Under the pieces are notes generated by a model that was given only the letters and a program-made list of their open reading frames with translations, made no database searches and was not told where the DNA came from. Shown one piece after another: positions 2,755 to 56,400 of a DNA stretch of 64,000 nucleotides. The translations under genes and the position numbers were made by a program. Numbering within the stretch: the stretch's first letter is position 1; the number at the start of each line of letters is the position of its first letter. This stretch comes from Sphyrna mokarran (Eukaryota): positions 8,370,001-8,434,000 of the forward strand of contig JAGIQG010000006.1 of NCBI GenBank assembly GCA_024679065.1, in the 5' to 3' direction.

Positions 2755-3120
2755 CAACAACCTGGAGTCCCATCACATCCTGAGTTACATTTTCCTGATT
2801 CCTGTTCCTGATATGTACGTGACAGAAATAATCATCGGTGTCGTTCAGCTGCAGGTTCCTCATCCTTAGGGAAGCGTTTCCTTGGGTTGGGTTTCCAATC
2901 AGTTCATATTGATCTCCTTCATTCACAGTGACTGTGTCAGTGTAGCCAGAACCAGCCCCCAGGGAACGAGAGTAACTAAAAACAGTGGAAAATTTTTTTT
3001 GATGCCTCTTCATCCAGAGGACAGTGAGGGAGCTGAGAGAACGCAGAGGAGGATTGAAGGTGCAAGACAGAGTGACAGAATCTCCCTTCACCCCAGTCAC
3101 TGCCCGTGAATCGTTCTGAC
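2755..3120 (-). CDS. Siglec-15-like receptor copy 1, V-set domain 2 exon
   Basis: 366 nt, open frame, GTAAGT donor. The C2/TM exon is expected just left of the window (319 onward is homologous to ~41963 onward). Confidence 0.88.
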
Positions 3121-5809: not shown

Positions 5810-6199
5810 CTCTCATTATGAGATCTCCATGCTCCAATTGATAAGCTGCTCCTTTTTTACCATCGAGCTCCATGCGACAGGAATATTTATTTCTTGTGTC
5901 CTCTTTATCCAGCTGTTTGATGATGATTGAAGCTTCGTTCTTCCTCGGGTTTCCCAGCGCTTGGTAACGATTATTAATATTCAGGATGACCAGATTCTGA
6001 AACTGTCTGCCCGGTGCGTTTTGTGTTGGATAATTTGTATAATTAAATATCGCTTCCTTTCCTCTGAACCATTTAACCGTGATGTTGCCATTATATCCCG
6101 AGTGAGGGTGAGTGAACTTGCAGAACAGAACAGTAGCTTTTCCTTCCCTACCCGTCACCTTCTCCGGTGTCTCCATGCTCCAGTCATTGTGACTGTGAA
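5810..6199 (-). CDS. Siglec-15-like receptor copy 1, V-set domain 1 exon
   Basis: 390 nt, open frame, intact splice sites, YSCRME (F->S before the F-strand Cys). Confidence 0.9.
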
Positions 6200-11073: not shown

Positions 11074-11122
11074 ATTTTGCTGAACTGGTCAGTGTGAGTG
11101 TACACAGCATGATCCACAGCAT
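11074..11122 (-). CDS. Siglec-15-like receptor copy 1, signal peptide exon
   Basis: Same sequence as 53406-53454. Confidence 0.78.
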
Positions 11123-13892: not shown

Positions 13893-13992
13893 NNNNNNNN
13901 NNNNNNNNNNNNNNNNNNNNNNNNNNNNNNNNNNNNNNNNNNNNNNNNNNNNNNNNNNNNNNNNNNNNNNNNNNNNNNNNNNNNNNNNNNNN
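13893..13992. other. Assembly gap (100 N placeholder)
   Basis: Run of exactly 100 n. Confidence 0.99.
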
Positions 13993-15659: not shown

Positions 15660-16025
15660 CAACAACCTGGAGTCCCATCACATCCTGAGTTACATTTTCC
15701 TGATTCCAGTTCCTGACGTGTACGTGACAGAAATAATCATTGGTGTCGTTCAGCTGCAGGTTCCTCATCCTGAGGGAAGCGTTTCCTTGGGTTGGGTTTC
15801 CAATCAGTTCATATCGATCTCCTTCATTCACAGTGACTGGGTCATTGTAGCCAGAACCAGCCCCCAGGGAATGAGAGTAATTAAAAACAGTGGAAAATTT
15901 TTTTTGATCCCTCTTCATCCAGAGGACAGTGAGGGAGCTGAGAGAATGCTGAGGGGGATTGAAGGTGCAAGACAGAGTGACAGAATCTCCCTTCACCCCA
16001 GTCACTGCCCGTGAATCGCTCTGAC
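15660..16025 (-). CDS. Siglec-15-like receptor copy 2, V-set domain 2 exon
   Basis: 366 nt, open frame, intact splice sites. The downstream C2/TM exon would fall in the N gap. Confidence 0.88.
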
Positions 16026-20999: not shown

Positions 21000-21386
21000 C
21001 TCTCATTATGAGATCTCCATGCTCCAATTGATAAGCTGCTCCGTTACCATCGAGCTCCATGCGACAGAAATATTTATGTCTTGTGTCCTCTTTATTCAGC
21101 TGTTTGATGATGATTGAAGCTTCGTTCTTCCTCGGGTTTCCCAGCGCTTGGTAACGATTATTAATATTCAGGATGACCAGATTCTGAAACTGTCTGCCCG
21201 GTGCGTTTTGTGTTGGATAATTTGTATAATTAAATACCGCTTCCTTTCCTCTGAACCATTTAACCGTGATGTTGCCATTATATCCCGAGTGAGGGTGAGT
21301 GAACTTGCAGAACAGAACAGTAGCTTTTCCTTCCCTACCCGTCACCTTCTCCGGTGTCTCCATGCTCCAGCCATTGTTACTGAGAA
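21000..21386 (-). CDS. Siglec-15-like receptor copy 2, V-set domain 1 exon
   Basis: 387 nt (one codon shorter than copies 1 and 3), open frame, intact splice sites, YFCRME retained. Confidence 0.9.
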
Positions 21387-25725: not shown

Positions 25726-25774
25726 ATTTTGCTGAGCTGGTCAGTGTGAGTGTACACAGCACGATCCACAGCAT
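25726..25774 (-). CDS. Siglec-15-like receptor copy 2, signal peptide exon (MLWIVLCTLTLTSSAK)
   Basis: Paralog of 53406-53454 with intact ATG and GTATGT donor. Confidence 0.78.
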
Positions 25775-31015: not shown

Positions 31016-31229
31016 CCTTATGTGTACCTTTTACACATTTAACTAGTTGCAATATTGGGGTGTTTCCTAGGCTGCTGTTCAGTTTCAGTTTCTGCCTGCA
31101 CAGAGAGCAGCTTTTCAATAAATCTGTTGTGTGTTACTCTGAATCTACACATGCCAAACACATCTTTTCTTTGTGTTTAAAACCTATACCCCTTAACAGA
31201 GTTAGGACATTACAATTGCTTGGCACTGC

Positions 31230-38047: not shown

Positions 38048-38089
38048 ATTTGCCTGACGAAGACACAAGAGTGTCGAAAGCTCGCAGAT
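38048..38089 (+). ncRNA. Minimal type-I hammerhead ribozyme motif in Penelope pLTR
   Basis: ATTTGC-CTGACGA-A-GACAC-AAGA-GTGTC-GAAA-GCTC-GCAGAT: CUGANGA and GAAA cores, helix II GACAC/GTGTC, helix I ATTTGC/GCAGAT, palindromic AGCT helix III. Confidence 0.75.
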
Positions 38090-38756
38090 TTACTATCAAA
38101 TAAATCGGTTGGATTTAAAATTGGTGTTGCTAAATTCTTACTGAGTTCTTACTACCCCAGTCCAATGCCGGCATCTCTACATCATATTCTCAGATGGCCA
38201 GAGTGTTGCAGCATCACCCTGTTCAGCCCCCTGCCTCTGAGGTGCACCGTTATCTGAAATTGGGGAATCAGAAGGGCTGGTCGCTTCCAGCCTTTCCTGA
38301 GTGGAATGCCCCAGGATACACTCCAGGGAATTCCCCTCCCTCTGGAACTTGACGACACCTGGGTTAATCCATGGGATGGAGGGCAACTGGACTGAGCTCC
38401 AGAAGCCTCAGCATCATCAGATCTGCCTGTCCTGAAGACCAGCCATTGACTAATCATCAGAGTTCCTCTATCAGGAATCTGACCTCTTGCCTCAGCTTTT
38501 TTAACTCTGGTGCCACTGTTGTAATGTTGGTCTGAGTGCCACCCATTCCTGGCAGCGTGTCCTGCGGCAGGAGGCTCTGGGATTCCTGTATTCGGCCTCT
38601 CAGTGGCAGAAGTTTCACAGACACCCCTTCCTGGCATTCCTGGCTCTGCCTCCATATCTCCAGCAACTGATGGATGAACATTTCCAGAGATATCTCACTC
38701 GGTCAGGGCACAGCTGAGTTCTGGGATCAAATAGATCTCTGACTGTCTGATATGCA

Positions 38757-39716: not shown

Positions 39717-40537
39717 TGTCTGATATGCATCAGAAGTTGTGTGGTGTTCACCAGATAGTAACTCAGAAGCTGCCCGCTAATGTCACCCACCGGAGTGTGT
39801 GTGTCTCTGCGCTGTGGATGGTGTGAATGATAGCTGGGGTGTTACATCCTGTCTGCATCAACAGTGACAAAGTGGAAATAGTTGAAAGTTTCGGCGTTTT
39901 GGGGAGAGTGGGGGTGGCGGGGGGTTGGTGGATGTTGTGTCAGACTTACTAATGATATTGCAATCCAGTTAAATTCATGCTAATAGGTTTTGATCAGTCT
40001 CTGGGTGAGAAGAGGTTTGTGCTGTTAAAAAGGGGCTGGGATGATCAGAAATCATTTCATGATGGGCGCAAATCAAATTTTTAGCATCTCACGCTATTTT
40101 CCCAGCTCACCACACTGATCGCTGGGTGCAGTGAGGTGGTAAAATCACACCCTTAGGAATAGCTGTCAATGTGCCCAAGTGTAAATATCTGATCCTTTCT
40201 TCTCAATAAAACAATTGAGTCTTTCTTTGATCTTTGGCAATTAAACCACCCAAATTTACTGTCACACAGGCTCCAACACATGTCACATGATGTTTTTCAT
40301 ATTCCATTTAACTACAGTTCTAAACTGTTATATTCCTATTAAAGAAATGATATAGTGTGAAAGCATCACCATCCTGTACATTTCACAAATAAAGCACTAA
40401 AAAACAAGGCCTGCTGAATCTTTACTTCTTCCACTCATCAGCACAGACACAAGAATACCAGATTTCAAACAGAATAACAACTTCTCATGGAGGAAAAGAA
40501 GGATTCTGATTGGTTGAAGATTGTGTAAGACATATCT

Positions 40538-40608
40538 TCAGTAGACTGATGATTGAGAGTGAAATTTGCTGTATTTATGTTTTGCCGATTGTCCGTTGTC
40601 ACAGTGGA
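40538..40608 (-). CDS. Probable cytoplasmic-tail exon of copy 3 ((V)HCDNGQSAKHKYSKFHSQSSVY*)
   Basis: Best nearby acceptor (CAATCTTTCCAG) in phase 1 after the TM exon. An alternative acceptor near 40569 gives a different tail. No transcript support. Confidence 0.4.
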
Positions 40609-40902
40609 CTGGAAAGATTGTACCCAATGTTTCAAAACATGAGATTTTGTTGGTAATTTCTTCATTTGACCATTGTTTGGTAAATTTAGTTATTTTGGTT
40701 TAACTTTGACCCATGGGTTTATAAGACAAAGTTATACAGGGCCACTGTAACAATTTGGTTTTTTGGATACAGATCAGCCAGGCTCTGATTGAAAAAGTGA
40801 ACAGACCCGAGGGGCTGAATGGCCTCCTCCACAAAAACTCAAAGATTTCACAATATTACCATTAATCCTTCGCAGCAGTCACATTTTTATTGTGAAACTT
40901 AC

Positions 40903-41277
40903 CTACCGTCAACATCCAGATACTAAAACAAATTATAAAATATAAGATCAGTAAAAGAACCTGCACAACATAGGAAACAATAGTGGACATGTCCTTGTCT
41001 TCAGCGATGAGGTGGATCTGACGGACGTCTCTCCCGAGTTCAGTTACAGCCACACAGCTGTATGTCCCTCTCAGTATTGGGTTACGAAACTCTCCTGTGA
41101 CTTGATACTTGTCCGGCTCTTGTGTGACTGTTGTGTCAGGGCTGTTCCCGGACACTGAGCTGCCCACAGGATCGATCCATGTGATATTGGCAGGTGGCAC
41201 CGCTTTAACCCGGCACACGATGCTCTCTCCAACTATTTTATTGGTCACTGACGACAGATTCAAGATGGTGGCTGGGT
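40903..41277 (-). CDS. Siglec-15-like receptor copy 3, C2/I-set Ig domain + transmembrane exon
   Basis: 375 nt, phase 1-1, acceptor TTCCTTTCCCAAG, donor GTAAGT. ILNLS..C..PPANITW..VTGEF..GTYSCVAVTELGR is followed by hydrophobic STIVSYVVQVLLLILYFIICFSIWML. Confidence 0.9.
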
Positions 41278-41514
41278 CTTGGGAAAGGAAAGGGACAATG
41301 AGGTTAACACCAATCCATTGATCCTTACTGGAATATAGGAACAGGGATTGGCCATTTAGCCCCTTCAACTTGTTTGACTATTCAATGAGATCAGAATTGA
41401 TCTGTGACCAAGTTTCATTGAACTGCCTGAAGAAATGTTTCTGAACTTCAATCCTGAAAAGTCTGGCTCTGATGTTTAGGCTTCTGACTCCTGCCCTGAC
41501 TTTCAAAACCAGTG

Positions 41515-41885
41515 TCATAGAGTAATAGAGTCATAGAGGTTTACAGCATGGAAATAGGCCCTTCAGCCCAATTTGTCGATGCAGCCTTTTTTTTAAACCT
41601 CTAAGCTAATCCAAGTTGTCCACATTTGGCCTATATCCCTCTATACCCATCATATTCATATAACTATCTAAGTGGTTTTTAAAAGACAAAATTGTACCTG
41701 CTTCTATTACTATCTCTGGCAGCTTGTCCCAGACATTCACCGTCATCTGTGTAAAAACAAATGCCCCTCTGGACACTTTTGTATCTTTTCCCTCTCACCT
41801 TAAACTTATGCTCTCTAGTTTTAAAATCCCCTGCCTTTGGGAAAAGACTATCTCGCTGATCTGTGCCCCTCATTATTTTATATAC
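41515..41885 (-). mobile_element. CR1 LINE 3' fragment
   Basis: (CATAGAGT)n-type tail and ORF2 C-terminal remnant (KTREHKFKVRG). Confidence 0.75.
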
Positions 41886-42694
41886 AATGACAATAATGAC
41901 AGTGGCAATAATTTCTCCCATTCTACATTTAAAATTTCTTGTAACAATTTGAAACTTTTGATCAAATCACCTATTAACCTTTTATATTCCAGCAAATGTA
42001 ACCATTGTGATCTTTCCTTGTAAGGAACACTTGGATTCGGATATCAGTCTGCAAAATCTACACTCCCTCCAAGACCAATATATCTTTCCTACTCTGCGGT
42101 GCTCCTGAGCTGTTCAGATTCTGTCCAGCTGTGATCCAAGCTGAGCTTTGTATAGTTCAATCATAACCCCCTTATATTCTGTCCTCTGGATATAAAGGCC
42201 AGCATTTCATTCACCTGTATTTGATCATTTTCTGTTCATATCTATGATATTTTAATGAGTACATTTGACATGTTCTGAGCAATTTTCTGCCCTGGGTCTA
42301 AGGAAGGACCTGCTGGCCCTGGGGAGGATTCAGAGAATCCATCACGCAAACCAGCCTCCCATCCATTGACTCTGTCTACACTTCCCACTGCCTTGGCAAA
42401 GCAGTCGGAATAATGAAGGACCCTGGATATTCTCTCTTCCACCTTTGGGAAAAAGAAACAAAAGTCCGAGGTCCCGTACCAACAGACTCAAGGACAGCTT
42501 CTTCCCTGCTGCTGTCAAACTTTTGAGTAAACTTACCTTGCGTTAGGTTGATCTTTCTCTACAACCTCACTATGACTGTGACTCTACATTCTACACTCTC
42601 TCATTTCCTTCTCTATGAAGAGTATGTTTTGTCATATTGCACACAAGAAGCAATACTTTTCACTGTATGTTAAAGCATGTGACAATAATAAATC

Positions 42695-43285
42695 AGATCA
42701 AAAGGAGGTTCACAAGAATGATCCCAGGAATGAAAAGCTTGAGGAGTGTCTGAGAACTCTGGGTCAGTACTCGATGGAGTTTACAAGGAGAAGGGGAGAT
42801 CTCATCGAAACTTACAGAATACTGAAAGGACTGGATGAAGTGAACATGGGGAAGGTTAGATATATTGATGACTACAAGCACCGGACTGTGGCAACAAGGG
42901 AATTTCACTTCATTGCAGTGTTAATGTAAGCCTTACCTGTGAGTAATAAATAAACATGAAAGATATTTCCATTAGCAGGAGAGACTAGGATCCGAAGGCA
43001 CAGCCTCAGAGTAAAGGGACAATCCTTTGGAAAGAAGATGAGGAAGAATTTCTTCAGTCAGAGGGTGGTGAATCTCTGGAATTCATTACCACAGAAAGCT
43101 GTGAAGGCCAGTTCATTATACTTCAGACAGTGATAGACAGGTTGTGGATTGGTCACGGGATGAAAGGTTACAGGAAAAAGGTGGGAAAACGGGGTTGAGA
43201 AACTGATGAGACATGATTGAATTGCAGAGCAAACCCGATGGGCTGAATGGCCTAATTCTGCTCCTATATATTATGCTCTTATGGA
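42695..43285 (+). mobile_element. Ancient CR1 3' fragment (largely deleted in unit 1)
   Basis: RRGDLIETYRILKGLD and FFSQRVVNLWNSLP remnants. Confidence 0.7.
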
Positions 43286-45528
43286 CCTGTATAACTGGAT
43301 CTCCTCGGGTCTTTGGACTGTCACTGTTTCTAGATTAATGAATGATTATTACAATTCCATGGTGCTGAGATTCATTACAAGGCTCTCAGAGAGAAAGTAG
43401 TGGAGAGAGAGGTGACACCTAACAGAAGGAGATTGGATTATAATATTCATAAAGGAACCAGATCAACCCCTGGATTTGTTGTTAATCTGGGAAGTGGATT
43501 GAATTAATCGGAGTTTATCCATGGATCTTGACAACAGAGCTGCCCAGGGAATGGAGGATGAAAGAGTCTCCTGAACACTCACTGTTCCCGACAGGAAATG
43601 ACACTCACCACATCATCACAGTTCCAGATTGGTACTGCCAAAGGGGCAAAGGGCCCATGCCCAGGGGGCACCTTGAGACTGCCCACCAGGCACCTGGCAG
43701 TACCAAGGGGAAGGGCCTACGGGGCTGTGCCAAGTGGGTGGGGCCCAGGGGGCAATTGGTGGGAATGGGGGGATCCCACTGCCACTCTGCATTGTGATCG
43801 ATTGGGGCTGGAGGGAGGTCAGTGAACAGGTCGAGCCGGGAGGAGAGGGGTGTTTTGTCAGGTGGGTCTGCCTCCCGTGGGGCAATCTGCTGGGAGTGGG
43901 GTCTCCTGGGAGGTGGGGTGTCTGCTGAGGGGGGTCTGCCTCCCGAGGGTTCTGGAAATCCACCTCTGGCCGTGTTGGTCACAGCCAATCATTCAGTGTC
44001 TATTGACTCACTCAGCGCTGTTTCCAGATGTGGTCATTGGGACCAGGTTATTTGTGTTGGAATAATAAAGGTTCACCTCCATCTCAGCCCCTCACTGGGA
44101 ATTGACCTGGTCTTAACTTTTCACAGTGCAGAAGAGGGCATTCAGCCCATTAAAGCCACATGGACTTTTACCCAGACTTAACGCATAACCCTCATATTTA
44201 TCCCTACACATGTTTGGGCACCAAAAGGTTCTAAGTGCTGAATTTGTCGGAAAACTGTTGTAATTCACGATTGTTTTTCCAGTGGGAGTTGACACTCGAA
44301 TCTCCCACACTCTGTGCAAAGCAGTGTTCACGGTCACAAATATCATTAAAAGATCGGGGGGATGGAGCCAATCCATGTAAAAGTCTGTCAGTTCTGGAAC
44401 TCTGTGAAGGAGCAATGGCCCTGAGCTCTCAGCCTACAGTTTGCTGGCTGGCGATTGAGCTAACCAGCCTGGGGTCCTCACAGTGCTGCCCCTCCAGCCA
44501 TCCGCCCACGGCCTGATCGCGGACCCCACAAGAATTCATGGGTCAGCCTCGACCCTGTCATCATCCAGGAGTGCCCCAATCTCCACCCCCACCTACCCCC
44601 CGCAGTGACGATCCCTCTTTGGCAGATCCAGTCCCCTCGGGAGGCAGACCCCCCTCAGCAGACATCCCACCTCCCAGGAGACCCCACTCCCAGCAGATTG
44701 CCCCACAGGAGGCAGACCCACCTGACAGAATACCTCTCTCCCCCCGGCTCGACCTGTTCACTGACCTCCCTCCAGCCCCAATTGATCACAATGCAGAGTG
44801 GCAGTGGGATCCCCCCCCGTTCCCACTAATTGCCCCCTGGGCCCCACCCACTTGGCACTGCCGGGTGCCTGGTGGCAGTGTCAAGGTGTCCCCTGGGCAT
44901 GGGCTCTTTGCCCCTTTGGCAGGTCCAGGTGACACAATCTGGAACTGTGATAATGCCCAAACCAGGGGGGCAGCCCTCCCACCATCCGACCCCCATGGGT
45001 CTCCAGCTACTTCCCTGAAAGTGGGTGCTACTCTAAACCCCCCCGGAGTGAAGTTGTACTGGTGATGGGAGTGGGGGGGAATGTTAGTGGGCTTGGAGAA
45101 TTCAGTCCCAGGCCCCATTTTCACAATTAATTAACATTAAAAATAGATTTAAATCACTCGCCTGCTGCTGCCTCTGGTTTCCAGTGGGGTCCTGACTGCG
45201 CCAGATCTTCGGCGCTGGGTGATGTGTGTCTGTCTGGGACACACACGCAAATCCCGTGAATCGGTCACCAGCGATTCTCCCATCCCACCGGGCTAAAAAA
45301 TTAGGAAACTGGGGAGAAATTTAGCCTGGCCAATCCACCTAACCCATAAATCTTTGGACTGTGGGAGGAAACCACACCAACACAGGAAGACCATCAAACT
45401 CCACAATGTATAAAATGATCCAAGCTGGAAATTGCCAGCACTGTGAGGCAGTAGTACAAACCACTGTACCACCTGCTACAGAATGTTTTATCCACATCCC
45501 CATATCACAAACATTGATGTTTTCTTAC

Positions 45529-45894
45529 CAACAACCTGGAGTCCCATCACATCCTGAGTTACATTTTCCTGATTCCTGTTCCTGACGCGTACGTGACAGA
45601 AATAATCATTGGTGTCGTTCAGCTGCAGGTTCCTCATCCTGAGGGAAGCGTTTCCTTGGGTTGGGTTTCCAATCAGTTCATATTGATCTCCTTCATTCAC
45701 AGTGACTGGGTCATTGTAGCCAGAGCCAGCCCCCAGGGAACGAGAGTAACTAAAAACAGTGGAAAATTTTTTTTGATCCCTCTTCATCCAGAGGACAGTG
45801 AGGGAGCTGAGAGAACGCAGAGGGGGATTGAAGGTGCAAGACAGAGTGACAGAATCTCCCTTCACCCCAGTCACTGCCCGTGAATCGTTCTGAC
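45529..45894 (-). CDS. Siglec-15-like receptor copy 3, V-set domain 2 exon
   Basis: 366 nt, phase 1-1, acceptor TCCTCCCTCCCTCAG, donor GTAAGA. GDSVTLSCTF..W..LIGNPTQGNASLRM..D..YFCHV is an Ig V-set pattern. Confidence 0.9.
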
Positions 45895-48141
45895 CTGAGG
45901 GAGGGAGGATTTGAAAGAACAGATATTAATTATCATGTAGTTTTATTAAATGTAATCTCTACAATGTTTATCTACCCTGTGATATCCCTAAAGACAGATA
46001 ACACCGACCTAGATTTATACAAATACCTGGAAGTTAATGTTCCCTTCAGGAAATGAAGTTGGAAAAGTGCTGAGATCTTGGAGGGAAATTGCTCTGGAGG
46101 ATGTGACAGCACTGAGATAGAAAAGGCCATGGAGGGATTTAAAGAGCAGGATGATGTTGTTAAATAATGAGGAAATGGGTCTTGTTCCTCTGGAGAGGAT
46201 TTCCTGCCGGGTCTGATGGACAATGTGATTGGTGGGATGAAAATGGATTGTGCTGGTGGCTTTTGGGACAGCATTGGGATAAAACCATGGATAAGTTATC
46301 TCAGCCTGCCCGTACTAGACAGAGACATACTCCCATTACTCTCAATATCTACAACTGTCCCCCTCATGGGATAGCATGGAGACACGGAGGTTAGCACTGC
46401 TGCCTCACAGTGTCAGGGACCTGGATTTGATTCCTGACTTGTGTCACTGTTTGTGTGGAGTTTGCACATTGTCTGTGTGGGTTTCCTCTGAGTGCTCCGA
46501 ATTCTCCCACATTCTGGAAGATGTGCTGGTTAGGTGCATTGACCAGAATAGGCTCCGGACTGTGGTGACGAGAGGAATTTCACAGTAACTTCATTTCAAT
46601 TTTAATGTAAGGCTTATTTGAGACTAATAAATTAACTTTAATTAAATTCACAGCAGGCAGGGCCCAGGCATTCACAAAGATGGAAATCTCAGTCTTGTAC
46701 TTTCCCATTTCAAATCCATTTTACTCCAGAGAGCAGGTTAGTGAAGGAGGATCCAGGTTCTAATCTTAGTCTTATATTTAATTACCGAGTCAATAATTAC
46801 AAACAAATATATCCAAACTCAACTGCACAGTTATAGAAAATATGTTTGAAAGGTGTTCAGGAAAAGCCACTCTTTGCATATCATTAAACAGAACTATATC
46901 CAATTAGGAAATTAAATCCTCATTAAATCCGCTGTGATGTGCTCCTTAGGTGGGTTGGCCATGTTAAATTGTCCCGTAGTGACTTAAAAAGTTTCATGAA
47001 TAACAATCCTTCCACCATGCCAACAAATATAGCCCTTAACTAGCAATTAGTGTTGATATAAGGACCTTATCCCTTCTCCATTGTTATTAATCCAGTGGTG
47101 GGCTGAGGAGAGGCTTGTAACAAAATCCAAAAAGCAAACACTTCCCATGTTATCCAATGTGTGCTTCCCCCCTTGTAACTCATAAACCTTTGTGATAACC
47201 CCTGCGAGGTCTATGGGAAAGCATTGATTGACCTCTCTGTGGGACTCATTGAGTATGAGTTCCCCTGGTAACAGGCAGTGCCCATCTATTCCTGAGGCTT
47301 GTATAAGGCAGGCCTTGGACTGGGCCTGCTGATTTGCAGTCCCTGGCAGGACCTAGTGGTTTGGAGATGTCTGATTGGGGCTTCATTACACTCTGGATTT
47401 GTTGTACCTGCTGCTGCCAGACTGGGAGCTGAGAGTTACTGGAGAGGGAAGTTGCTGCTTGGACAGACAGAGAGAGGCCCCGAGGCCTGGAGGCTCACAG
47501 GCCTCACAGCCTGCAATGGAGAGAGGGAAACTGGACAGAGCCTGAAAACTGCTCTGAGTGCAATTGGAGAATCCCAGCTCAGGATCAATATTAAATCAGT
47601 TTTACATTTCTACACAATGTGAAACATGACAAGTCCAAATCCCTCCCTCTGAAATCCACACACCAGATGTGTCAATGTGAGCCACTCAGTTATGTCCCCA
47701 CTTTTACAGGGAAACCAGAGCTGAGTAATAAATCTAGTTTGATATCTAGTTTGCCCTGTACCACCCTGGTTTAAGGGCAATCCATTCCGCAGTGGCCCAG
47801 TGAATCATCAGCGATTCAGGAAGAAGATGTCCCAAAAATTTCCTGGGATGGATGATAACTATCAGCATTGCTCACAAACCAAGAGTAAACTCTTTATCAT
47901 CAAAACCCGACAGCACAAAAGGAGGGCATTCAGCCCATCGAGTCTGCACTGACCACAATCCCATCTGTCCCTGTAACCCCACACATTTACTCCACTAATC
48001 CCTCTAATTTACACATCCCGGGACACTAAGACACAATTTAACATGGCCAATGCACCTCTGTAGCACATCTTTAAAACATTTGTGCTTGTGTTTGGATTAA
48101 ATTTACATACAGTCTTATATCGAATTTGAAATATTCCTCAC

Positions 48142-48531
48142 CTCTCATTATGAGATCTCCATGCTCCAATTGAAAAGCTGCTCCTTTTTTACCATCGAGC
48201 TCCATGCGACAGAAATATTTATTTCTTGTGTCCTCTTTATCCAGCTGTTTGATGATGATTGAAGCTTCGTTCTTCCTCGGGTTTCCCAGCGCTTGGTAAT
48301 GATTATTAATATTCAGGATGACCAGATTCTGAAACTGTCTGCCCGGTGCGTTTTGTGTTGGATAATTTGTATAATTAAATATCGCTTCCTTTCCTCTGAA
48401 CCATTTAACCGTGATGTTGCCATTATATCCCGAGTGAGGGTGAGTGAACTTGCAGAACAGAACAGTAGCTTTTCCTTCCCTACCCGTCACCTTCTCCGGT
48501 GTCTCCATGCTCCAGTCATTGTGACTGTGAA
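48142..48531 (-). CDS. Siglec-15-like receptor copy 3, V-set domain 1 exon
   Basis: 390 nt, phase 1-1, acceptor TTTTGTGTTTTCCAG, donor GTGAGG. WSMETP..VLFCKFTHPH..W..LGNPRKNEASI..YFCRME parallels the Siglec-15 V-set (WSMQVP..VLPCTFTHPH..LGNPRRNDLSL..YFCRVE). Confidence 0.92.
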
Positions 48532-50958
48532 CTGGAAAACACAAAATGCTGTTTAAACACCTAACTGAGATGGGAGCTGTTACGGGACTCTGACGGAAGC
48601 TTTCTTGTTCTATTCCCCTCAACTAACCAAACAAAGTGACGGAGTGATTTGAAGATGAACTTTACAATAGCTATCGGCCCCTGAATATCCATTCAGAGTA
48701 AAGAATTCAGAGATATAAAGGCAATTAAAATCTCAGCTATGATTACAAATAATTAACATACACCAATAACAGAATATGAGTTATCTCCATCCAATCACAG
48801 TTAATACTTCATGTAACATCATATAAAATGTAATATTTAAAACCAATCACAATCACCTTACACTTGCTTAATTATAATATCCAATAGCGGTGAGCTTTTT
48901 ACTGCCTGATTTGAGTATTATTCTCCCCTATCTTTACACACTTAGACAGTGTCTACACACTCCAACATCGGTCCTTGTCCAGTGCATGATGTAAAAGACT
49001 TCTCCCAGCACAGTACCTTTCTCCCTTCTTTACCTGAAGGTCAAACTAGTTTCTTGTAATAACCACCTTGTAATTACACATTGTGTAAGCTTTGTGATTT
49101 GTCCATGTTAATCCTTTCACTGAACACAGTTATTCATGTGCCAATTATGTTCCTCCATAATTATTAATATGGGTATTGATCCACCTCAAGAGGCAATGGT
49201 TCCAGCCCTTCAGGATTGGCCAAGAGTCTCCAGCCTAAGAAATTATGTACTTGCCACAGAGGAAGTGCAGTGAAGGTTCACCAGACTGATTCCTGGGCAG
49301 GCAGGATTGATGTATGAGGAGAGATTGGGGGGACAATTCACTGGAGTTTAGAAGAATGAGAGAGAATCTAACTGAAATTTTTAAATTCTAATTGAGCTGG
49401 ACAGACTGGATGAGGGATAATCTTTGCCCTAGCTGGTGTCTGGAACAAAGGGTCACATTCTCAGGATGTAGGGCAGGCCATTTGTTTTATTCATTCATGG
49501 GAAATGGCTTTCAATGGAATGACATTTCAGAGGAATGTTAGGAGTCCCATCAGTATGGATCTGGAGTCACATGTAGGTCAGGCTCGGGTAATGAGGTCAG
49601 ATTTCCTTCCCTAAAGGACATGAGTGAATCCAATGGGTTTGTTTATGACAACCAACATGGTCATCGTTAGAGATTTAAATCCAGATTTTTATTGAAAAAG
49701 GGTGAAAGTTGTAAATGTTGATGTTCAGGGGACTTGGGAGTGCTCAGGATGGGAACACAGAAAGTTAGTATACAGGTCCACCAGCAATTAGGAAGGAAAC
49801 TGACATGTTAGTCTTTACTGTAAGAGGATTGGGGTAGAAGAATAACAAAGTCTTGCAACAATGGGTGGGATTGCATCTAGAATATTTACAATTGTATTTT
49901 CCATATTTAGGAAGGATAAACTTATATAGGAGGCAGTAGCGTGAATGTTCACTAAATTTTTCCCTGGGTTGAGATTGTTGTGCTGTGGTACATAGAACAT
50001 AGAGACTGAATAAACCAGCTCACTATTCTCTGGAGTTTTAAAGAGTAACAGGTTACCTCATCGATAGCTAGAATATTGTGAAAGACGTTGAAAGGGTGAA
50101 CGCTGAGAGATTGTTTCCCCTGACTGGGGGATTATTGTCTCACAGCACCAGCAACCAAGGTTCAATTCTGGCCTCGGGTCACTGTCTGTGTGGAAGCTGT
50201 ATGTTCTTCCCATGTCAGTGTGGATTTCCTCTGGGTGCTCCGGTTTTCTCCCACAATCTAAAGATGTGCAGGTTAGGTTGATTGGCCATAATAAATTGCC
50301 TCTTAGTGTCAGGGGAAAAAAAACAGGATAAATGAAGGTTACGGAGATAGAACCTGAATGGGATTGTGGTCAGTACAGACTTGATGGGCTGAATGGTCTC
50401 CTAGAAACGTAGGGATTCTATGATTTGACAAGGATAAAGGGCTGACTATTTTGGACAGAGATGAGGAGAAATTCCTTCACTAAAGTGTAATGATTCTATG
50501 GGAATCTCTATGCCAAAGGGTTATAACTGCTCCTGAGCTGAATAAAGTTAACTCTTGGATAGATAGATTTTTGGTCCCTCGGGGATTAAGAAGATTATTT
50601 CTTTTATTTATTATGTCACAAGCAGGCTTACATTAACACAACAATGAAGTAACTGAGTTACTGTGAAAATCCCTAATCACCACACTCCGGCGCATGTTTG
50701 GGCACAATGAGGGAGAATTTAGCTAATGCACCTAATTAGCACATCTTCTACAACTGAGGGAGAATTTAGCATGGCTAATGCGCCTAGCCAGCACATCTTT
50801 CTGACTGTGGGAGGAAACCGGAGCACCAAGAGTAAACCCACACAGACACAGGGAAAGTGTGCAGACTGTGCACAGACAGTGACCCAAGCTGGGAATCAAA
50901 CCCAGGTTGTTGGTGCTGTGAGGCAGCAGTGCTAACCACTGTGCCATCATATTACGAG

Positions 50959-51799
50959 CTCAGTAAGAATTTAGCAACACCAATTTTAAATCCAACCGAT
51001 TTATTTGATAGTAAAATTGCGAGCTTTCAACACTCTGTGTCTTCGTCAGGCAAATCCAGTGTTCTGGTCTGCTATAGCACACATCAGCACAGACAGTCAC
51101 ATATTGCTGATTAGAATGTGAATCTTTACATCTAACCTGCTATTCAAGTGTTAATGTGGCCAACAATGTGTGCGAAGGGAATCCTGAGCATTGGTTTGAG
51201 AATTGTGTATTTTCTCCAGACAGCACAGTAATTGAGGTTTTTTGCTAACCCAGGCAAGTTACGGGGGTTACAGATAGTAACACACTATCTGTAACCCCCG
51301 TAACACTATGACACACTATCTGTAACCTCTGTAACACTATGACACACTATCTGTAACCTCTGTAACACTATGACACACTATCTGTAACCCCCATAACACT
51401 ATGACACACTATCTGTAACCCCCGTAACACAATGACACACTATCTGTAACCCCCGTAACTTGCCTGGGTTAGCAAAAAACCTCACTTACTGTGCTGTCTG
51501 GAGAAAATACACAATTCTCTAACCAATGCTCAGGATTCCCTTCACACACATTGTTAGCCACTTTAACACTTGAATAGCAGGTTAGATGTAAGCATTCGCA
51601 TTCTAATCAGCAATCTGTGACTGTCTGTGTTGATATGTGTGCTATTGTAGACCAGAACACTGCATTTGCCTGACAAAGACACAGAGTGTTGAAAGCTCGC
51701 AATTTTACTATCAAATAAAATGGTTGGATTTAAAATTGGTGTTGCTAAATTCTTACTGAGTTCTTACTACCCCAGTCCAACGCCGGCATCTTTACACGA
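50959..51799. mobile_element. Duplicate of the palindromic Penelope derivative (unit 3)
   Basis: Same sequence as 8627-9467 at offset 42332. Confidence 0.9.
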
Positions 51800-53405
51800 T
51801 CATATTACCGCATGGAAGTGTGTACTGCAGTCTAACTAGAGTGTGAAACAGTTCGTAAGGTCACTTGCTGATAAGAAATAAGCTGGGGACAGCCATTCAG
51901 CCCTTCAAGCCTGCTCCACCATTCATTAAGATCATGGCTGATCTGATTGTGCTCTTAACTTCATTTTCCTGCCTGTTCCCACACCTTTGACTTGTAGGTT
52001 AAAAATCTGAATAAGCCTTGGCTACATTCAATGATTCAGCATCCACTGCTGTCTGGGGAGGTGAATTCTACAAACAAATGACCCTCGGAGAGAAGAAGTT
52101 CCTGTGCATCTCCATCTTAAACTGGAGACCCTTATTCTGAAACTCTGGCCCCTCGTTCAAGATGCGGGAAAAAACTTCCTCTCAGCATCTATATGTCAGG
52201 CTCACGCAGATTCTAATATGTTTCAAGAAGATCATCTTTCAATCTTCTAAACCCCAAAGTTATCGACACAATCTGCTCGACCTTTCCCCAAAAGACCGAC
52301 TGCTGAACCCCAGAATCAGCCCAGTGAATCCTTCTGGCACCTTCTTTGCGTCTGGAGTCACATGTAGGCCAGGCTGGGTAAGGATGGCAGATTTCCTTCT
52401 CTAAAGGATATGAGTGAATCAGATGGGTTTTTACGATAATTGATCTAGTCATCATCTGAGTTTTAGTTCCAGATTTTTATTTAAAAATGGTGCAACTTGT
52501 AAATGTTGATGTTCATGGACTTGGGGGTGCTCACATTGGGAACACAGAAAGTTAGTGTAAGACCCACAAGCATTTCCTTTATTCATCAGAGACCAAAGTC
52601 TCTGACAGTGCGAGAGTAACTTCTCTCTTTCCATACTCTATATATCGACTAATAACACGAAAGTTTCCCATATATCTTCGCAATGATCTTATACCCCGGG
52701 CGATCTGATTTATCCTCTCATTGTAGTATCTTATGTTTGAGGGTTTTCATTTACTGCATTGTAAAATGTTCTTATTTGCAAAGGAAGCTAAAGCAAATAC
52801 ACAAATCTAACAACACAAATCCTTAACAATTCTTCTGACAGACCAGCCCCGATCCTACATCAGTATAAAATTCAGCACAATATACAGTAAGATATTTAGT
52901 GTGAAAGCATTATATTCAGTGTCATATTGAGTATAATATTCAGCAATTGTCCATGTGTATTCTATATAATATTCAGAATACAATTCAATATACATTCAGG
53001 AACTGTAAAGTCATCATCGTGCCAGATGACCAGAGGCTGCTCTACCCTTTGAGTGGGAGAGCTGCCTGGTGATGATTTAACCTGAGGATCATTACATCTC
53101 AGCTGAGGGGCAAGGTTGAGAAGGCAGGGTCTTCATGAATAACTCCTGCAGGTACAGGAATTGAACCCACACTGTTGGCATAACTCACCAGATGGCCATC
53201 CAACAGAGCTAAACCAACCCACAGTAGCTTTGTTGGTATAATATTCCGTATAATATGAAGTTTTATATTCAGCATAATATTCCATGTAACACAAAGTCAC
53301 TGATCCTTCTCACTTGCGGTGAGCCAGTGTTTTTTGACACTTTGAATTATTTTACTGAAACAGTATAGCAGAGGGAAAATGAGTTCATTCTTTAAAAATA
53401 CATAC

Positions 53406-53454
53406 ATTTTGCTGAACTGGTCAGTGTGAGTGTACACAGCATGATCCACAGCAT
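53406..53454 (-). CDS. Siglec-15-like receptor copy 3, exon 1 (signal peptide MLWIMLCTLTLTSSAK)
   Basis: ATG at 53454-53452, then 16 hydrophobic/small codons + 1 nt and a GTATGT donor (phase 1). Joins in frame to the V1 exon. Conserved in all three units. Confidence 0.8.
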
Positions 53455-56400
53455 TCTCTTCACTCCTGCAGTACACAGAGCTCTCTGAAGGCTCAGCACC
53501 CACTCGACGGGACTAATATCATTGCTCACTATCTGATCTTGTTGCTTCCTTTATAGGACCCTTGTTAGACCTGACTTGGAATACTGTGCACAGTTCTGGT
53601 CGCCTCACTATAGGAAGGACGTGGAAGCTATTGAAAGGGTGCAGAGGAGATTTACAAGGATGTTGCATGGATTGGGAGGCATGCCTTATGAAGACAGGTT
53701 GAGGGAGCTGGGACTGTTCTCCCTGGAGAGACGAAGGTTGAGAGGAGACCTGATAGAGGTTTACAAGATGTTGAGAGGAATAGATAGGGTGGACTCTCAG
53801 AGACTATTTCCCAGGGCTGAAAGGGTCGTGACGAGAGGGCACAGATTTAAGGTGCAGGGAAGCAAGTACAGAGGGGATGCTAGGGGAAAGTTTTTCACTC
53901 AGAGGGTGGTGAGTGAATGGAATCAGCTGCCGTCGGTGATGGTCGAAGTGAACTCGCTGGGATCTTTTAAAAGACTTCTGGATGAGTATATGGGATCCAA
54001 TGGGATTGGGGGTTATAGATAGGTCTATGGCTGGGTAGGTTTGGATGTGTTCGGCACAACTTGTGGGCCGAAGGGCCTGTTTGTGCTGTAGTGTTCTATG
54101 TTCTATGTTCCTTCAGTAAACTTGCTGTTAAACAAAAATACTGCTGAAATTTTGCAAGAATGCTGACCAGTTTAAATGGGGAAGTGCATTCTAATATGAA
54201 TTCAAAAACAGGATTCTATATTTATTCTTTCACAGGATGTGGGTGGTGGTCATTGCTGGCTAGGTTACCATCAATTTCCCATGTATAATTGCCTTTCCAA
54301 TGTGTTCATGAGCTGCCTTCTTGAAACGCTGCAGTCCAGGTGGTGCAGGTACACCCACAGTGCAGTTAGGAAAGGAGTTCCGGGATTTTGACCCAGTGAC
54401 AGTGAGTGAACAGTGACATATTTCCAACTTAGGTTGAGTGTAGCTTGAAGGGGAACTTGTAGAGAGTGGGTGCTCCCATGGCTTCCCTTGGCCATCTAAG
54501 TGGAGGGGTTGTGGGTTTGGAAAATACTCTCGAAGGAGTTTTGGTGAGTTGCTGCAATGCCTTGTGGAAATGGTACACATGGCTAACAGTGTGCGTCAGC
54601 AGTGGAGAAAGTCAATAGTTAAAGTGATGGATGGGATGTCAGTTAATTGGGCTGCTTTGTCCTGGATGAAGTCAGGCTTCTTGAGTGTTGTTAGAGTTGC
54701 ACTCATCCCAGAAAATGGAGAGTATCTCATTACATTCCTGACTTGTGCTTTATCGATGGTGGAACAAAAGAACAAAGAAAATTACAGCACAGGAACAGGC
54801 CCATTGGATCTCCGAGCCTGTACTGATCATGCTGCCCGAGTGAACTAAAACCCTTGGCGCTTCCAGGGAACATATCCCTCTATTCCCATCTCATTCATCT
54901 ACTTGTCCAGATACTCCCTAAAAGTCACTAAGGTATCTGCTTTCACGATCTCCCCTGGCAATGACTTCCAGGCATTCACCATTCTTTGTGTCAAAAACCT
55001 GCCTCGTACATCACTTTTAAAACTTGCCCATCCCACCTTAAACCTGTGCCCCCTTGTAACTGACAATTCCACACTGGGAAAAAGCTTCTGACTATCCACT
55101 CTGCAGAAAATGCAGATGTGTGGGATAGAGGGTGATTTAGCTAATTGGGTTAGGAATTGGCTAGCAGGTAGAAGGCAGAGGGTGGTGGTTGATGGGAGAT
55201 ATTCATCTTGGAGTTCGGTGACAAGTGGTGTACCTCAGGGGTCTGTTTTGGGGCACCTGCTGTTTGTAATTTTTATAAATGATCTGGATGAGGGTATTGA
55301 AGGATGGATTAGTAAATTTGCAGATGACACTAAAGTCGGTGGAGTGGTAGATAGTGAAGAGGGGTGTTATAGTTTGCAGAGGGACTTGGACAAGTTGCAG
55401 AGCGGGGCCGAGAGGTGGCAAATGGAGTTTAATGTGGAAAAGTGTGAGGTAATGCACTATGGCAGAAATAATAAATGTGTAGAGTATAGGGCAAATGGTA
55501 GGATTCTTAGTTAGTCTAGATGAACAGAGGGATCTTGGTGTGTATGTGCATAGATCCCTGAAAGTAGGCAGTCAGGTCGAGAAGGTTGTTAGGAAGGCAT
55601 ATGGAGTCTTGGCTTTTATTGGTAGAGGGATTGACTTTCGGAGCCGCAACGTCATGTTGCAACTGTACAAAACTCTAGTGCGGCCGCACTTGGAGTATTG
55701 TGTGCAGTTCTGGTCCCCACATTATAAGAAAGATGTGGATGCATTGGAGAGGGTACAGAGGAGGTTTACCAGGATGTTGCCTGGTATGGAGGGCAGGTCT
55801 TATGAGAAGAGGCTGAGGGATTTGAGGTTGTTTTCGTTAGAAAGAAGGCGGCTAAGAGGAGACCTTATTGAAACATATAAGATGATTAGAGTTTAGATAG
55901 GGTGGACAGTGATAGCCTTTTTCCTAGGATGGAGAAAGCTAGCACGAGGGGAACACAGCTTTAAATTAAGGGGTATGAGTTATAGGACGGATATCAGAGG
56001 TAGGTTCTTTACTCAAAGAGTGATTAGGGAGTGGAATGCCCTGCCTGCAGCTGTTGTAGATGCGCCAAGTTTGGTGGCGTTTACGAGGTTAGTTGATAAG
56101 TATATGGAAGAGAAGGGAATGGTTTAGTTTGGAGGGGCATTGCTTTTTATATTGGTCGGCGCAACATCGGAGGCCGAAGGGCCTGTTCTGTGCTGTAATG
56201 TTCTATGTTCTATGTTCTATGACTCTCATAATCTTGGAGACTCCTATCAGGTCTCCCCTCAACTTCCATCGCACCAGTGAGAACAAACCAAGTTTCTCCA
56301 ACTTCTTCTCATAGAAAATGCCCTCCATACCAGGTGATATCTGGTAAATCTTTTCTCTACCCTCTCCAAAGCCTCCACATCCTTCTGGTAATGTGATGAG

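What the first reader, a model, noticed from the sequence alone, without database searches (positions are those of the whole stretch)
40538..53454. Tandemly expanded Siglec-15-like receptor family with a non-canonical V-V-C2-TM architecture
Seen: four well-supported exons (leader, V1, V2, C2+TM) plus a probable tail exon join in frame via phase-1 GT-AG introns into a ~416-aa type I membrane protein. At least three paralogs are arrayed head-to-tail. Known: Siglec-15 is normally a conserved V-C2-TM gene. Its signature motifs (WSM, FTHPH, GNPR.N, YFCR.E; C2 N-x-S, VT.E, G.Y.C.A...LGR) are all recognisable here, and V1 has the canonical B-F Cys pair. Inference: this is a lineage-specific multigene immune lectin family in a cartilaginous fish, produced by internal V-exon duplication followed by tandem gene duplication. 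It is invisible in the ORF track because the leader exon is only 49 nt.
Basis: partly seen in the sequence, partly recalled or inferred. Interest (0 to 1): 0.85.

Follow-up and report, generated by a model that had tools for sequence, protein, structure and literature searches.

The report
Shark Siglec-15-like two-V receptor gene array
This stretch holds tandem copies of a shark immune-receptor gene whose first domain closely resembles the sugar-binding head of Siglec-15 and is followed by a second, different V domain; the same design is already predicted in many sharks, rays and chimaeras, so it is real but not unique to this animal.

Summary
On the minus strand there are a 49-nt leader, a V1 exon, a V2 exon and a C2+TM exon. 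All have AG/GT borders and phase-1 junctions. Leader+V1+V2 occur three times.

V1 is clearly Siglec-15-type: human Siglec-15 7ZOZ scores E 8e-18 by sequence and TM 0.83 by fold. The strand-F Arg is kept.

V2 is a distinct V-set with His at that position. It is as close to B7-H3/B7-H4 V domains as to Siglec-15's.

The V1-V2-C2-TM design is not specific to this lineage. [quoted passage not shown] A duplication of V1 inside this family is disfavoured (AU p 0.020). An older duplication is not excluded (p 0.18).

Gene A belongs to the uncharged-TM, Arg-keeping arm. No ITIM exon was found.

The V1-to-V2 junction has no direct RNA support. One contig shows only that a V2 exon is spliced at both edges.

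First-stage notes report similar V-V genes elsewhere in this genome. These notes are unchecked.

Verdict: a real, recently expanded member of a family that is annotated in databases but that I did not find described in print.

The parts
53406..53454 (-). Gene A leader exon (49 nt: ATG plus 16 codons plus 1 nt)
   Evidence: The ATG and the GTATGT donor are seen. The 16-residue peptide shares M-L-.-I-.-L-C...S-A-K with the N-termini of P0007/P0161 and resembles those of P0003 and P0154. Identical or 97.8% identical copies lie at 11074-11122 and 25726-25774.
48142..48531 (-). Gene A V1 exon: Siglec-15-type V-set with WSM, FTHPH, GNPRKN and YFCR(Arg)MEL
   Evidence: Borders are AG|...|GT. Pfam V-set scores 29.9 bits. 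Human Siglec-15 7zoz_A scores E 8e-18. The AlphaFold model has pLDDT 90.6. Its best Foldseek hit is 7zoz_A, with TM 0.83 and rmsd 1.7 A.
45529..45894 (-). Gene A V2 exon: second V-set, YFCH(His)VRV on the F strand
   Evidence: Borders are AG|...|GT. Pfam V-set scores 62.4 bits. It is 82% identical to V2 of the Mustelus asterias model P0151. One 514-nt contig of run X1 covers 45529-45896 and leaves the stretch at both edges.
40903..41277 (-). Gene A C2-set plus transmembrane exon (uncharged TM, one Gln; no Lys)
   Evidence: The AG acceptor and the G|GTAAGT donor are seen. It aligns with C2+TM of P0166 (56.6% over 122 residues), P0003 (58%) and P0151 (64%). The family-profile C2+TM matches C2+TM of human Siglec-15 at 29.3 bits.
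40538..40608 (-).
   Evidence: There is an AG acceptor and an open frame ending in TGA at 40540-40538. The tails of six homologues give no similarity here, and no ITIM-like motif lies in this exon.
40862..40902 (-). Alternative read-through tail (13 residues, then a stop) if the donor at 40903/40902 is not used
   Evidence: The ORF 40862..41368 runs through the donor. The Scyliorhinus canicula model P0126 aligns across it (41272-40865; 40903-40865).
25726..25774 (-). Copy B leader exon
   Evidence: 97.8% identical to A's leader with its flanks. The ATG and GT donor are intact.
21000..21386 (-). Copy B V1 exon (387 nt, one in-frame 3-nt deletion, Arg kept)
15660..16025 (-). Copy B V2 exon
11074..11122 (-). 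Copy C leader exon
   Evidence: 100% identical to A's leader with its flanks. Borders are shown.
5810..6199 (-). Copy C V1 exon (Arg kept; 3 amino-acid differences from A)
2755..3120 (-). Copy C V2 exon
13893..13992 (.). Assembly gap (N run) where copy B's 3' part and the spacer before copy C would be expected
   Evidence: The N run is listed. Homology of B to A stops at 14060. The 2893 bases before the gap (11000-13892) are 100% identical to 53332-56224.

Best explanation
Gene A and the partial copies B and C are recent tandem duplicates of a Siglec-15-related type I receptor found across cartilaginous fishes.

Shown:
- The ectodomain is encoded as V1, V2 and C2.
- V1 is a Siglec-15-type lectin head that keeps the Arg, Trp and B-F cysteines used by human Siglec-15 to hold sialic acid.
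- V2 is a distinct V-set with His at the Arg position.
- The TM of gene A is of the uncharged class, not the Lys class that couples Siglec-15 to DAP12.

Shown from database models of other species: the family has two arms.
- One arm is a single gene with a highly conserved Lys-TM, which has mostly replaced the V1 Arg by Leu.
- The other arm has a variable number of uncharged-TM genes that keep the Arg and often carry ITIM-like tails.
- Within a species the two arms share nearly identical V2 and C2 but differ in V1 and TM.

Inferred: gene A makes a leader-V1-V2-C2-TM protein on leukocytes. This protein recognises sialylated ligands through V1, with V2-C2 acting as a shared stalk or second binding surface. 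It does not signal through DAP12. Whether it inhibits, acts as a decoy or needs a partner is open, because its cytoplasmic tail is unresolved.
For: Exon anatomy and three intact copies.

V1 against human Siglec-15:
- E 8e-18, with W of WSM, the B-strand Cys and the C-R of the F strand aligned.
- Fold TM 0.83 and rmsd 1.7 A, four orders of magnitude better in E-value than the next hit.
- R143, W44 and C64-C142 are the functional residues according to passages of PMC10264397.

Family profile against the PDB:
- V1 to Siglec-15 V: 75.3 bits.
- C2+TM to Siglec-15 C2+TM: 29.3 bits, with the family's TM Lys aligned to the Lys of the human TM.

Collinear V1-V2-C2 models occur in 19 species. The closest is Mustelus asterias P0151: V1 54%, V2 82%, C2 75% identity.

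The two arms:
- Of 18 Lys-TM models with a V1 motif, 15 have C-L-V, 2 have C-R-V and 1 has C-W-V.
- Of 9 uncharged-TM models, 7 have C-R-V.
- Gene A has C-R-M and a TM that aligns with uncharged-TM models.

Within-species identity between the arms:
- Pristis: V1 54%, V2 83%, C2 91%.
- Heterodontus: V2 85%, C2 99%.

In the careful tree the Lys-TM V1 domains form their own clade (92/94) that excludes the window's V1. The window's V2 groups with Mustelus Lys-TM V2 (100/99).

A V2 exon 97% identical to A's is present in run X1 with breaks exactly at the exon edges.
Against: - No read or contig joins V1 to V2 at this locus. The X1 contig carries 104 nt upstream of V2 that do not lie on A's V1 at 85% likeness or more, and V1 had zero depth. 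X1 is only guessed to be RNA. Its V2 is a mosaic of variants that matches none of A, B or C.
- Database support consists of automatic gene models, not cDNAs. Eight such models lack all or most of V1: P0060, P0163, P0191, P0198-P0201 and P0205.
- No ITIM-type tail exon was found in the 15 kb downstream of the TM exon. The basic stop-transfer residues seen in relatives (KR or KK) are TV here.
- All 10 inferred changes among the three V1 copies are nonsynonymous (pairwise 9:0, 3:0, 8:0). This fits relaxed constraint as well as diversifying selection.
- Part of copy C is 99.4-100% identical to A up to an assembly gap, so the copy number may be inflated by the assembly.
- The C95-C104 disulfide of human Siglec-15 is absent.
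Confidence: 0.7

Rival explanations
1. V1 and V2 are alternative heads. The leader is spliced to one or the other (V1-C2 or V2-C2), so the V-V protein is a product of gene models, not of the cell. Because all introns are phase 1, either choice keeps the frame.
For: All junctions are phase 1. Eight RefSeq models in relatives lack all or most of V1. The only contig on the locus shows V2 with an upstream partner that is not A's V1, and V1 had no depth. First-stage notes on other pieces raise the same idea, unchecked.
Against: Nineteen species have models with complete V1 and V2 in one protein. No model with V1 joined directly to C2 was seen; P0141, which looked like one, keeps a truncated V2. The laid part of the X1 contig overshoots the V2 exon by two bases (to 45896). 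That fits an upstream exon ending in AG, as V1 does, and not the leader, which ends in AT. This is a weak hint, about 1 in 16 by chance.
Confidence: 0.15
2. The copies in this window are decaying or incomplete duplicates, or partly an assembly artefact, and not working receptors.
For: No ITIM or other recognisable tail was found, and the stop-transfer KR is lost. V1 changes are all nonsynonymous, and pN/pS for V2 is 0.46-2.4. B has no C2+TM exon in the window. A block of 2.9 kb is 100% identical to another block up to the N gap.
Against: All nine leader, V1 and V2 exons have open frames and canonical splice sites, and the single indel is in frame. The Arg, Trp and cysteines are kept in all three V1 copies. 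C's V2 region differs from A's by 6%, so C is not simply A assembled twice.
Confidence: 0.15
3. The gene arose: a canonical V-C2 Siglec-15 duplicated its own V exon in this lineage.
For: V1 and V2 are each other's best match within the window apart from their own copies (E about 1e-10, 28% identity). V2 also hits human Siglec-15 (6e-7). Independent V duplications of this kind do exist in the lungfish and a salamander, where d1 and d2 cluster together.
Against: V2 is present with the same His motif in sharks, rays and Callorhinchus. V1 and V2 lie on opposite sides of a 91/87 branch. The one-clade tree is 20 log-likelihood units worse, p-AU 0.020. V2 together with C2 aligns as one unit with the IgV-IgC of CD276 at 44-47 bits.
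Confidence: 0.1
4. It is basically a B7-family or CAR/CLMP-like adhesion molecule (as some RefSeq names suggest) that only resembles Siglec-15.
For: RefSeq names for family members include 'CD276 antigen homolog' and 'CXADR-like membrane protein'. V2's top sequence hit is CD276. V2-C2 matches CD276 and PD-L1 as a unit. The V2 fold search gives generic V-sets: Nav beta4, CRIg, nectin, CAR.
Against: V1 is specifically Siglec-15-like by both sequence and fold. The family TM with its Lys aligns to the Siglec-15 TM. For V2, Siglec-15 had the highest TM-score of the rows listed (0.79).
Confidence: 0.05

Closest known systems
Siglec-15 of mammals and teleosts (human structure 7ZOZ)
   Same: N-terminal V-set with the WSM, FTHPH, GNPR.N and YFCR motifs, the B-F disulfide, and the Trp and strand-F Arg of the sialic-acid site. 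One membrane-proximal C2 domain. In the Lys-TM relatives of other species the TM Lys aligns with the human one.
   Different: A second V-set exon lies between V1 and C2. Gene A has no TM Lys. There is no C95-C104 pair. The gene is multicopy and tandem, not a single conserved gene.
[quoted passage not shown] Mustelus asterias XP_ model P0151, Heptranchias perlo P0003, Heterodontus francisci P0150/P0166
   Same: Same domain order and same exon-sized blocks, with 50-82% identity per domain. Same His in V2. Gene A's TM resembles the uncharged-TM members P0166, P0126 and P0003.
   Different: Gene A shows no ITIM-bearing tail like those of P0003 or P0166. Its V1 is only 54% identical to that of the nearest species' annotated (Lys-TM) gene.
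CD276 (B7-H3) and other B7-family IgV-IgC proteins
   Same: V2 plus C2 align as one IgV-IgC unit with each of the two V-C units of CD276 (43.8-46.8 bits) and with PD-L1 (about 40 bits). Siglec-15 is said to share over 30% homology with the B7 family (passage of PMC6713637).
   Different: B7 proteins have no Siglec-type lectin domain in front. V2 scores no better with CD276 per domain (about 29 bits) than with Siglec-15 (33 bits).
Primate paired Siglecs (Siglec-5/14, Siglec-11/16)
   Same: An activating, charged-TM member and uncharged-TM members with ITIM-like tails sit in one cluster, with part of the ectodomain kept nearly identical within a species.
   Different: In primates the ligand-binding end is what gene conversion keeps alike (abstract of PMC5701461). 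Here the membrane-proximal V2-C2 is alike and the lectin head V1 differs, and the activating arm has mostly lost the Arg.
Lungfish Siglec-15 isoform X2 (P0006) and salamander 'Siglec-12' (P0012) with two V domains
   Same: Two V-sets in front of the membrane in a Siglec-15-related protein.
   Different: There both V domains are Siglec-15-type and cluster with each other, which indicates recent internal duplications. In the shark family V2 is a separate old lineage.

Membership tests
Siglec-15 (as characterised in mammals and teleosts) | N-terminal V-set specifically similar to the Siglec-15 V domain | tested here: met
   phmmer gives 7zoz_A E 8e-18 against 2.6e-6 for CD33. Foldseek gives 7zoz_A E 2.8e-11, TM 0.83 and rmsd 1.7 A, with the next entry at 5.5e-7.
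Siglec-15 (as characterised in mammals and teleosts) | Essential strand-F arginine (human R143), plus W44 and the C64-C142 disulfide | tested here: met
   The residues are aligned. The Arg is present in V1 of A, B and C. The residue roles come from passages of PMC10264397.
Siglec-15 (as characterised in mammals and teleosts) | Second V-domain disulfide C95-C104 (C'-C'' loop) | tested here: not met
   There is no cysteine in the corresponding stretch of V1. The feature is taken from PMC10264397.
Siglec-15 (as characterised in mammals and teleosts) | Architecture of one V-set, one C2-set and a TM | tested here: not met
   A second V-set exon lies between V1 and C2.
Siglec-15 (as characterised in mammals and teleosts) | Lysine in the TM helix for DAP12/DAP10 | tested here: not met
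   Gene A's TM has no Lys, Arg, Asp or Glu. The Lys is present in 21 models of other species. The feature is described in passages of PMC7226832.
Siglec-15 (as characterised in mammals and teleosts) | Orthology by position (SIGLEC15 neighbourhood) | not testable with these tools
Siglec-15 (as characterised in mammals and teleosts) | Binding of sialylated glycans | not testable with these tools
   This needs protein and glycan assays.
Chondrichthyan V1-V2-C2-TM Siglec-15-like family (database models) | Collinear V1, V2 and C2+TM with family-level identity | tested here: met
   blastp and tblastn against 15 or more models give V1 44-57%, V2 46-82% and C2 40-75% identity. The alignment is A1. fam_V1 (95/91) and fam_V2 (90/80) clades include the window's domains.
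Chondrichthyan V1-V2-C2-TM Siglec-15-like family (database models) | V1 and V2 joined in one mRNA | tested here: inconclusive
   Only one run was available, kept as contigs. V2 is spliced at both edges, but its partners were not seen.
Chondrichthyan V1-V2-C2-TM Siglec-15-like family (database models) | For the uncharged-TM arm: a cytoplasmic tail with ITIM-like motifs | tested here: inconclusive
   None was found between 25900 and 40905 using six homologous tails or a motif scan. Short exons can escape such a search.
B7 family (CD276-like) | An ectodomain made only of IgV-IgC unit(s) of B7 type | tested here: not met
   V2-C2 resembles a B7 unit, but a Siglec-15-type V1 precedes it.
CD33-related Siglecs | V-set closest to CD33-type Siglecs | tested here: not met
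   CD33, Siglec-8, -5, -7 and -10 score 2.6e-6 or worse, against 8e-18 for Siglec-15.

The most novel reading that the evidence does not exclude
The V1-V2-C2 genes of cartilaginous fish preserve the ancestral, chimeric form of Siglec-15: a Siglec-type lectin V domain placed in front of a B7-H3-like IgV-IgC unit. On this reading the canonical V-C2 Siglec-15 of bony vertebrates arose by loss of V2, which would explain why Siglec-15 looks both like a Siglec and like a B7 protein. In sharks the module became a paired-receptor system. The stalk (V2-C2) is kept alike between activating and non-activating genes, while the lectin head diverges and the activating arm gives up sialic-acid binding.
Probability: 0.15. 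Interest if true: 0.7.

Novelty: new member of a known kind. Interest (0 to 1): 0.42.

Why it matters
Siglec-15 is treated as a single, conserved V-C2 gene from fish to man, and it is a drug target in bone disease and cancer. This locus, and the database models it led to, show something different in cartilaginous fish: a multigene, two-V, two-arm family. That family appears in automatic annotation, but none of the six literature searches run here found a description of it.

It offers a natural experiment on three points:
- what the Siglec-15 head does when uncoupled from DAP12;
- how paired receptors evolve;
- whether Siglec-15 and the B7 family share a modular origin.

For the scan itself, it shows that the many 'V-V Siglec-15-like' notes on this genome belong to one annotated family and should be judged together.

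Tried and rejected
- The search for homologous proteins with the V2 exon alone found nothing (1 candidate, none scored). The tool's length window (0.55-1.75x) excludes the 300-500-residue relatives, so this blank says nothing.
- A search with P0126 added only two more distant models.
- I searched for ITIM-bearing tail exons downstream of the TM exon, using the tails of six homologues and a motif scan. This gave only chance-level hits, four motif matches in or near repeats.
- The ESM Atlas search for V2 gave generic V-set clusters: nectin-2, CD33-like, PD-1, CD22-like. This did not discriminate.
- The fold search for V2 was likewise generic.
- I first read P0141 as a V1-C2 isoform with V2 skipped. 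Its sequence shows a truncated V2, so I dropped that claim.
- I considered that the X1 contig came from copy B or C. Its ten differences from A are shared only in part with each (6 of 10 with C, 4 of 10 with B), so it comes from another copy, individual or close species.
- The nearest non-family rows in the first tree (P0022, P0077) turned out to be PILR-like. Deep relations among V1, bony-vertebrate Siglec-15, the chondrichthyan V-C2 genes and PILR-like domains stayed unresolved (polytomy). I therefore do not claim that the V-V-C2 family, rather than the V-C2 genes (P0048, P0177, P0094, P0075), is the one true orthologue.
- Literature: searches found no description of a shark or ray V-V-C2 Siglec-15-like family. 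I read passages of PMC7226832, PMC9630641, PMC10264397, PMC6713637 and PMC8455134, and search-listing abstracts only for the rest. Bornhofft et al. 2018, cited in PMC9630641, is not in the library. Supplementary file 9 of PMC8455134 (gene-family lists) could not be seen. Either may mention shark Siglecs.
Translation, searches, alignments and folds were done exon by exon, and the total length was obtained by adding exon lengths.

Full report
What is there.

- Leader: a 49-nt exon beginning with ATG at 53454 and followed by GTATGT.
- V1: a 390-nt exon at 48531..48142.
- V2: a 366-nt exon at 45894..45529.
- C2+TM: an exon starting at 41277.

Each exon is preceded by AG and followed by GT, and each junction splits a codon after its first base. 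By my reading the C2+TM exon ends at 40903, before GTAAGT.

Pfam finds a V-set domain above its curated cut-off in both V exons (29.9 and 62.4 bits against 26). The third exon gives only sub-threshold Ig matches.

Every search, alignment and fold was made exon by exon.

Copies.

tblastn and blastn find leader, V1 and V2 three times on the same strand:
- A: 53454-45529
- B: 25774-15660
- C: 11122-2755

All nine exons are open and have canonical borders. B's V1 has one in-frame 3-nt deletion.

The repeat unit includes the spacer. A's upstream region 54108-64000 matches B's upstream region 25866-40188 at 93-98%, apart from an inserted retroelement.

Only A has a C2+TM exon in the window. C's would lie just before base 1. 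B's homology to A stops at 14060, next to the N run 13893-13992.

The 2893 bases before that gap are 100% identical to 53332-56224, and 4816-11268 is 99.4% identical to 47152-53600. C's V2 region, by contrast, is only 93.6% like A's. So C is either a very young mosaic copy or partly an assembly effect. I left the gap alone.

Among the three V1 exons every difference is nonsynonymous (pairwise 9:0, 3:0, 8:0). V2 is mixed. The counts are too small to separate diversifying selection from relaxed constraint.

What the domains are.

V1's best solved relative is human Siglec-15 (7zoz_A, E 8e-18). CD33 follows at 2.6e-6. The alignment keeps the Trp of WSM, the B-strand Cys and the Cys-Arg of strand F. 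Passages of PMC10264397 identify these as W44, C64-C142 and the essential R143. The extra C95-C104 pair of the human protein is absent.

An AlphaFold model of the V1 exon (pLDDT 90.6) hits 7zoz_A first, with TM 0.83, rmsd 1.7 A and E 2.8e-11. The next entry is at 5.5e-7.

V2 is different.
- Its top sequence hit is CD276 (B7-H3), about 29 bits for each of the two V domains. Siglec-15 scores 33 bits and VTCN1 32 bits.
- Its model (pLDDT 88.6) matches many V-sets about equally. Siglec-15 has the highest TM-score among the rows shown but ranks 21st by E-value.
- It has His where V1 has the Arg.

Relatives.

A full scan of 1.84 billion representatives with V1 gave 133 hits, led by proteins with several V matches. 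Names, and domain maps, show collinear V1-V2-C2-TM models of about 400 residues in 19 chondrichthyan species:
- Callorhinchus, Heptranchias, Heterodontus, Cetorhinus, Carcharodon, Mustelus
- two Chiloscyllium, Rhincodon, Stegostoma, Pristis, Hypanus, Hemitrygon
- Leucoraja, Amblyraja, Rhinoraja, two Mobula, Narcine

Scyliorhinus has V1-poor models. [quoted passage not shown]

The nearest relative is Mustelus asterias P0151 (V2 82%, C2 75%, V1 54%), so the window probably comes from a related shark.

Variants with extra V1 or V2 repeats, and eight models lacking all or most of V1, also exist. These are automatic models. No transcript-derived member turned up in the clusters I could list.

A family profile (alignment A1) against the PDB gave these matches:
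- V1 to Siglec-15 V: 75.3 bits.
- C2+TM to Siglec-15 C2+TM: 29.3 bits, with the family's TM Lys on the human Lys.
- V2+C2, as one unit, to each IgV-IgC unit of CD276: 43.8-46.8 bits.
- V2+C2 to PD-L1: about 40 bits.

Two arms.

I tabulated the models. The rows include isoforms and orthologues, so they are not independent.
- Eighteen Lys-TM models with a V1 F-strand motif have C-L-V in 15, C-R-V in 2 and C-W-V in 1. Their TM is almost invariant.
- Nine uncharged-TM models have C-R-V in 7, and several carry ITIM-like motifs.
- V2 is nearly always C-H-V.

Gene A has C-R-M in V1, C-H-V in V2, and a TM that aligns with the uncharged class (P0166 56.6%, P0003 58% over 122 residues including the TM).

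Within a species the two arms share V2 and C2 but not V1:
- Pristis: V1 54%, V2 83%, C2 91%.
- Heterodontus: V2 85%, C2 99%.
- For comparison, the same arm between species: 68-80% in all three domains.

The tree agrees. Lys-TM V1 domains form a clade (92/94) without the window's V1, while the window's V2 sits with Mustelus Lys-TM V2 (100/99).

This is the reverse of primate paired Siglecs, where conversion keeps the extracellular, ligand-binding part alike (abstract of PMC5701461).

Origin of V2.

In the careful tree (70 domains, 126 columns) several things hold:
- The family's V1 (95/91) and V2 (90/80) are each monophyletic.
- V2 is sister to the second domain of another chondrichthyan V-V-TM family (97/69).
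- That pair is split by a 91/87 branch from V1, bony-vertebrate Siglec-15, the chondrichthyan V-C2 'Siglec-15' genes and PILR-like domains. Those groups form an unresolved polytomy.

Forcing V1+V2 of the family into one clade costs 20 log-likelihood units (p-AU 0.020). Adding both domains of the V-V-TM family gives p 0.179.

So a recent internal duplication is disfavoured, and an ancient one is open.

Expression.

Only one run held any of the stretch. It was guessed to be RNA and is kept as contigs. Laid on 45300-48800, it put one 514-nt contig on 45529-45896. That is the V2 exon plus two bases, with ten mismatches. A further 104 and 42 nt of the contig lie nowhere in the stretch. V1 had no depth, and everything else was repeats.

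The breaks at both exon edges argue for a spliced RNA of some family member. The ten mismatches are a mosaic of B-like and C-like variants, so the contig is not from A, B or C. Because V1 differs strongly between arms while V2 does not, an upstream V1 of the other arm would not have been laid.

The junction V1-V2 at this locus is therefore untested.

Tail.

Six homologous tails and a motif scan found no ITIM-type exon between 25900 and 40905. The read-through resembles the end of the Scyliorhinus canicula model P0126. Signalling by gene A is therefore unknown.

Literature and limits.

Six searches and passages of five papers gave no description of this family in cartilaginous fish. PMC7226832 treats fish Siglec-15 as a Lys-TM, Arg-bearing activating receptor and does not mention sharks.

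First-stage notes of this scan report further V-V Siglec-15-like genes before, after and away from this window. I used them as leads only.

Verdict.

It is wrong on lineage specificity and probably wrong on a recent internal duplication.

The locus is a new, recently duplicated member of a family that public annotation already contains but that I did not find described in print. Interest is moderate.

Noticed in passing
window 11000-13892 and 53332-56224; 4816-11268 and 47152-53600: A 2.9-kb block is 100% identical to another block and ends exactly at the N run. It follows a 6.4-kb block at 99.4% identity. This is either a very young segmental duplication or an assembly duplication at a contig end.
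   Followed up: partly
window 33500-38200 (+), e.g. ORFs 34038-35090, 35254-36378, 36398-37758: There are long reverse-transcriptase-type ORFs of a retroelement. The element is inserted in copy B's upstream spacer and absent from the matching spacer of copy A (54108-64000). A 148-residue fragment of the same kind lies at 53576-54022.
   Followed up: partly
window 45300-45416, 46353-46703, 47874-48107; related copies near 50100-50950, 8430-8610, 23320-24130: These are short interspersed repeats inside the introns. Contigs of run X1 pile up on them at summed depths of 10,000-30,000, so they are very abundant in that run.
   Followed up: no
window 43611-43956 and 44627-44955: This is an inverted repeat pair (84% identity) in the V2-C2 intron that carries proline-rich ORFs on both strands. 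Related copies lie at 1870-2185 and 14734-15088.
   Followed up: no
proteins P0048, P0177, P0094, P0075 (Carcharodon, Cetorhinus, Amblyraja, Mobula): Chondrichthyans also have one-V V-C2-TM genes named Siglec-15. These keep YFCRVE but lack WSM and FTHPH, have an uncharged TM, and carry a tyrosine motif (LDYSEV in the Carcharodon model P0048) in the tail. By RefSeq accession order they lie close to the V-V-C2 genes.
   Followed up: partly
proteins P0001, P0006 (Protopterus), P0012/P0013 (Pleurodeles and a relative): Siglec-15-type V domains were multiplied independently in the lungfish (seven V plus one C2 in P0001; V-V-C2 in P0006) and in a salamander (V-V). The paired domains cluster with each other.
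   Followed up: partly
proteins P0154/P0155 (Pristis), P0166/P0150 (Heterodontus): Within a species the Lys-TM and uncharged-TM genes share V2 (83-85%) and C2 (91-99%) but not V1 (54%). This suggests gene conversion limited to the membrane-proximal half.
   Followed up: partly
proteins P0018, P0017, P0169, P0173, P0062, P0047: This is a second chondrichthyan family with two V domains, no C2, and ITIM-like tails. Its first domain falls on the V1 side and its second on the V2 side of the tree, so the V1-V2 pairing predates both families.
   Followed up: partly
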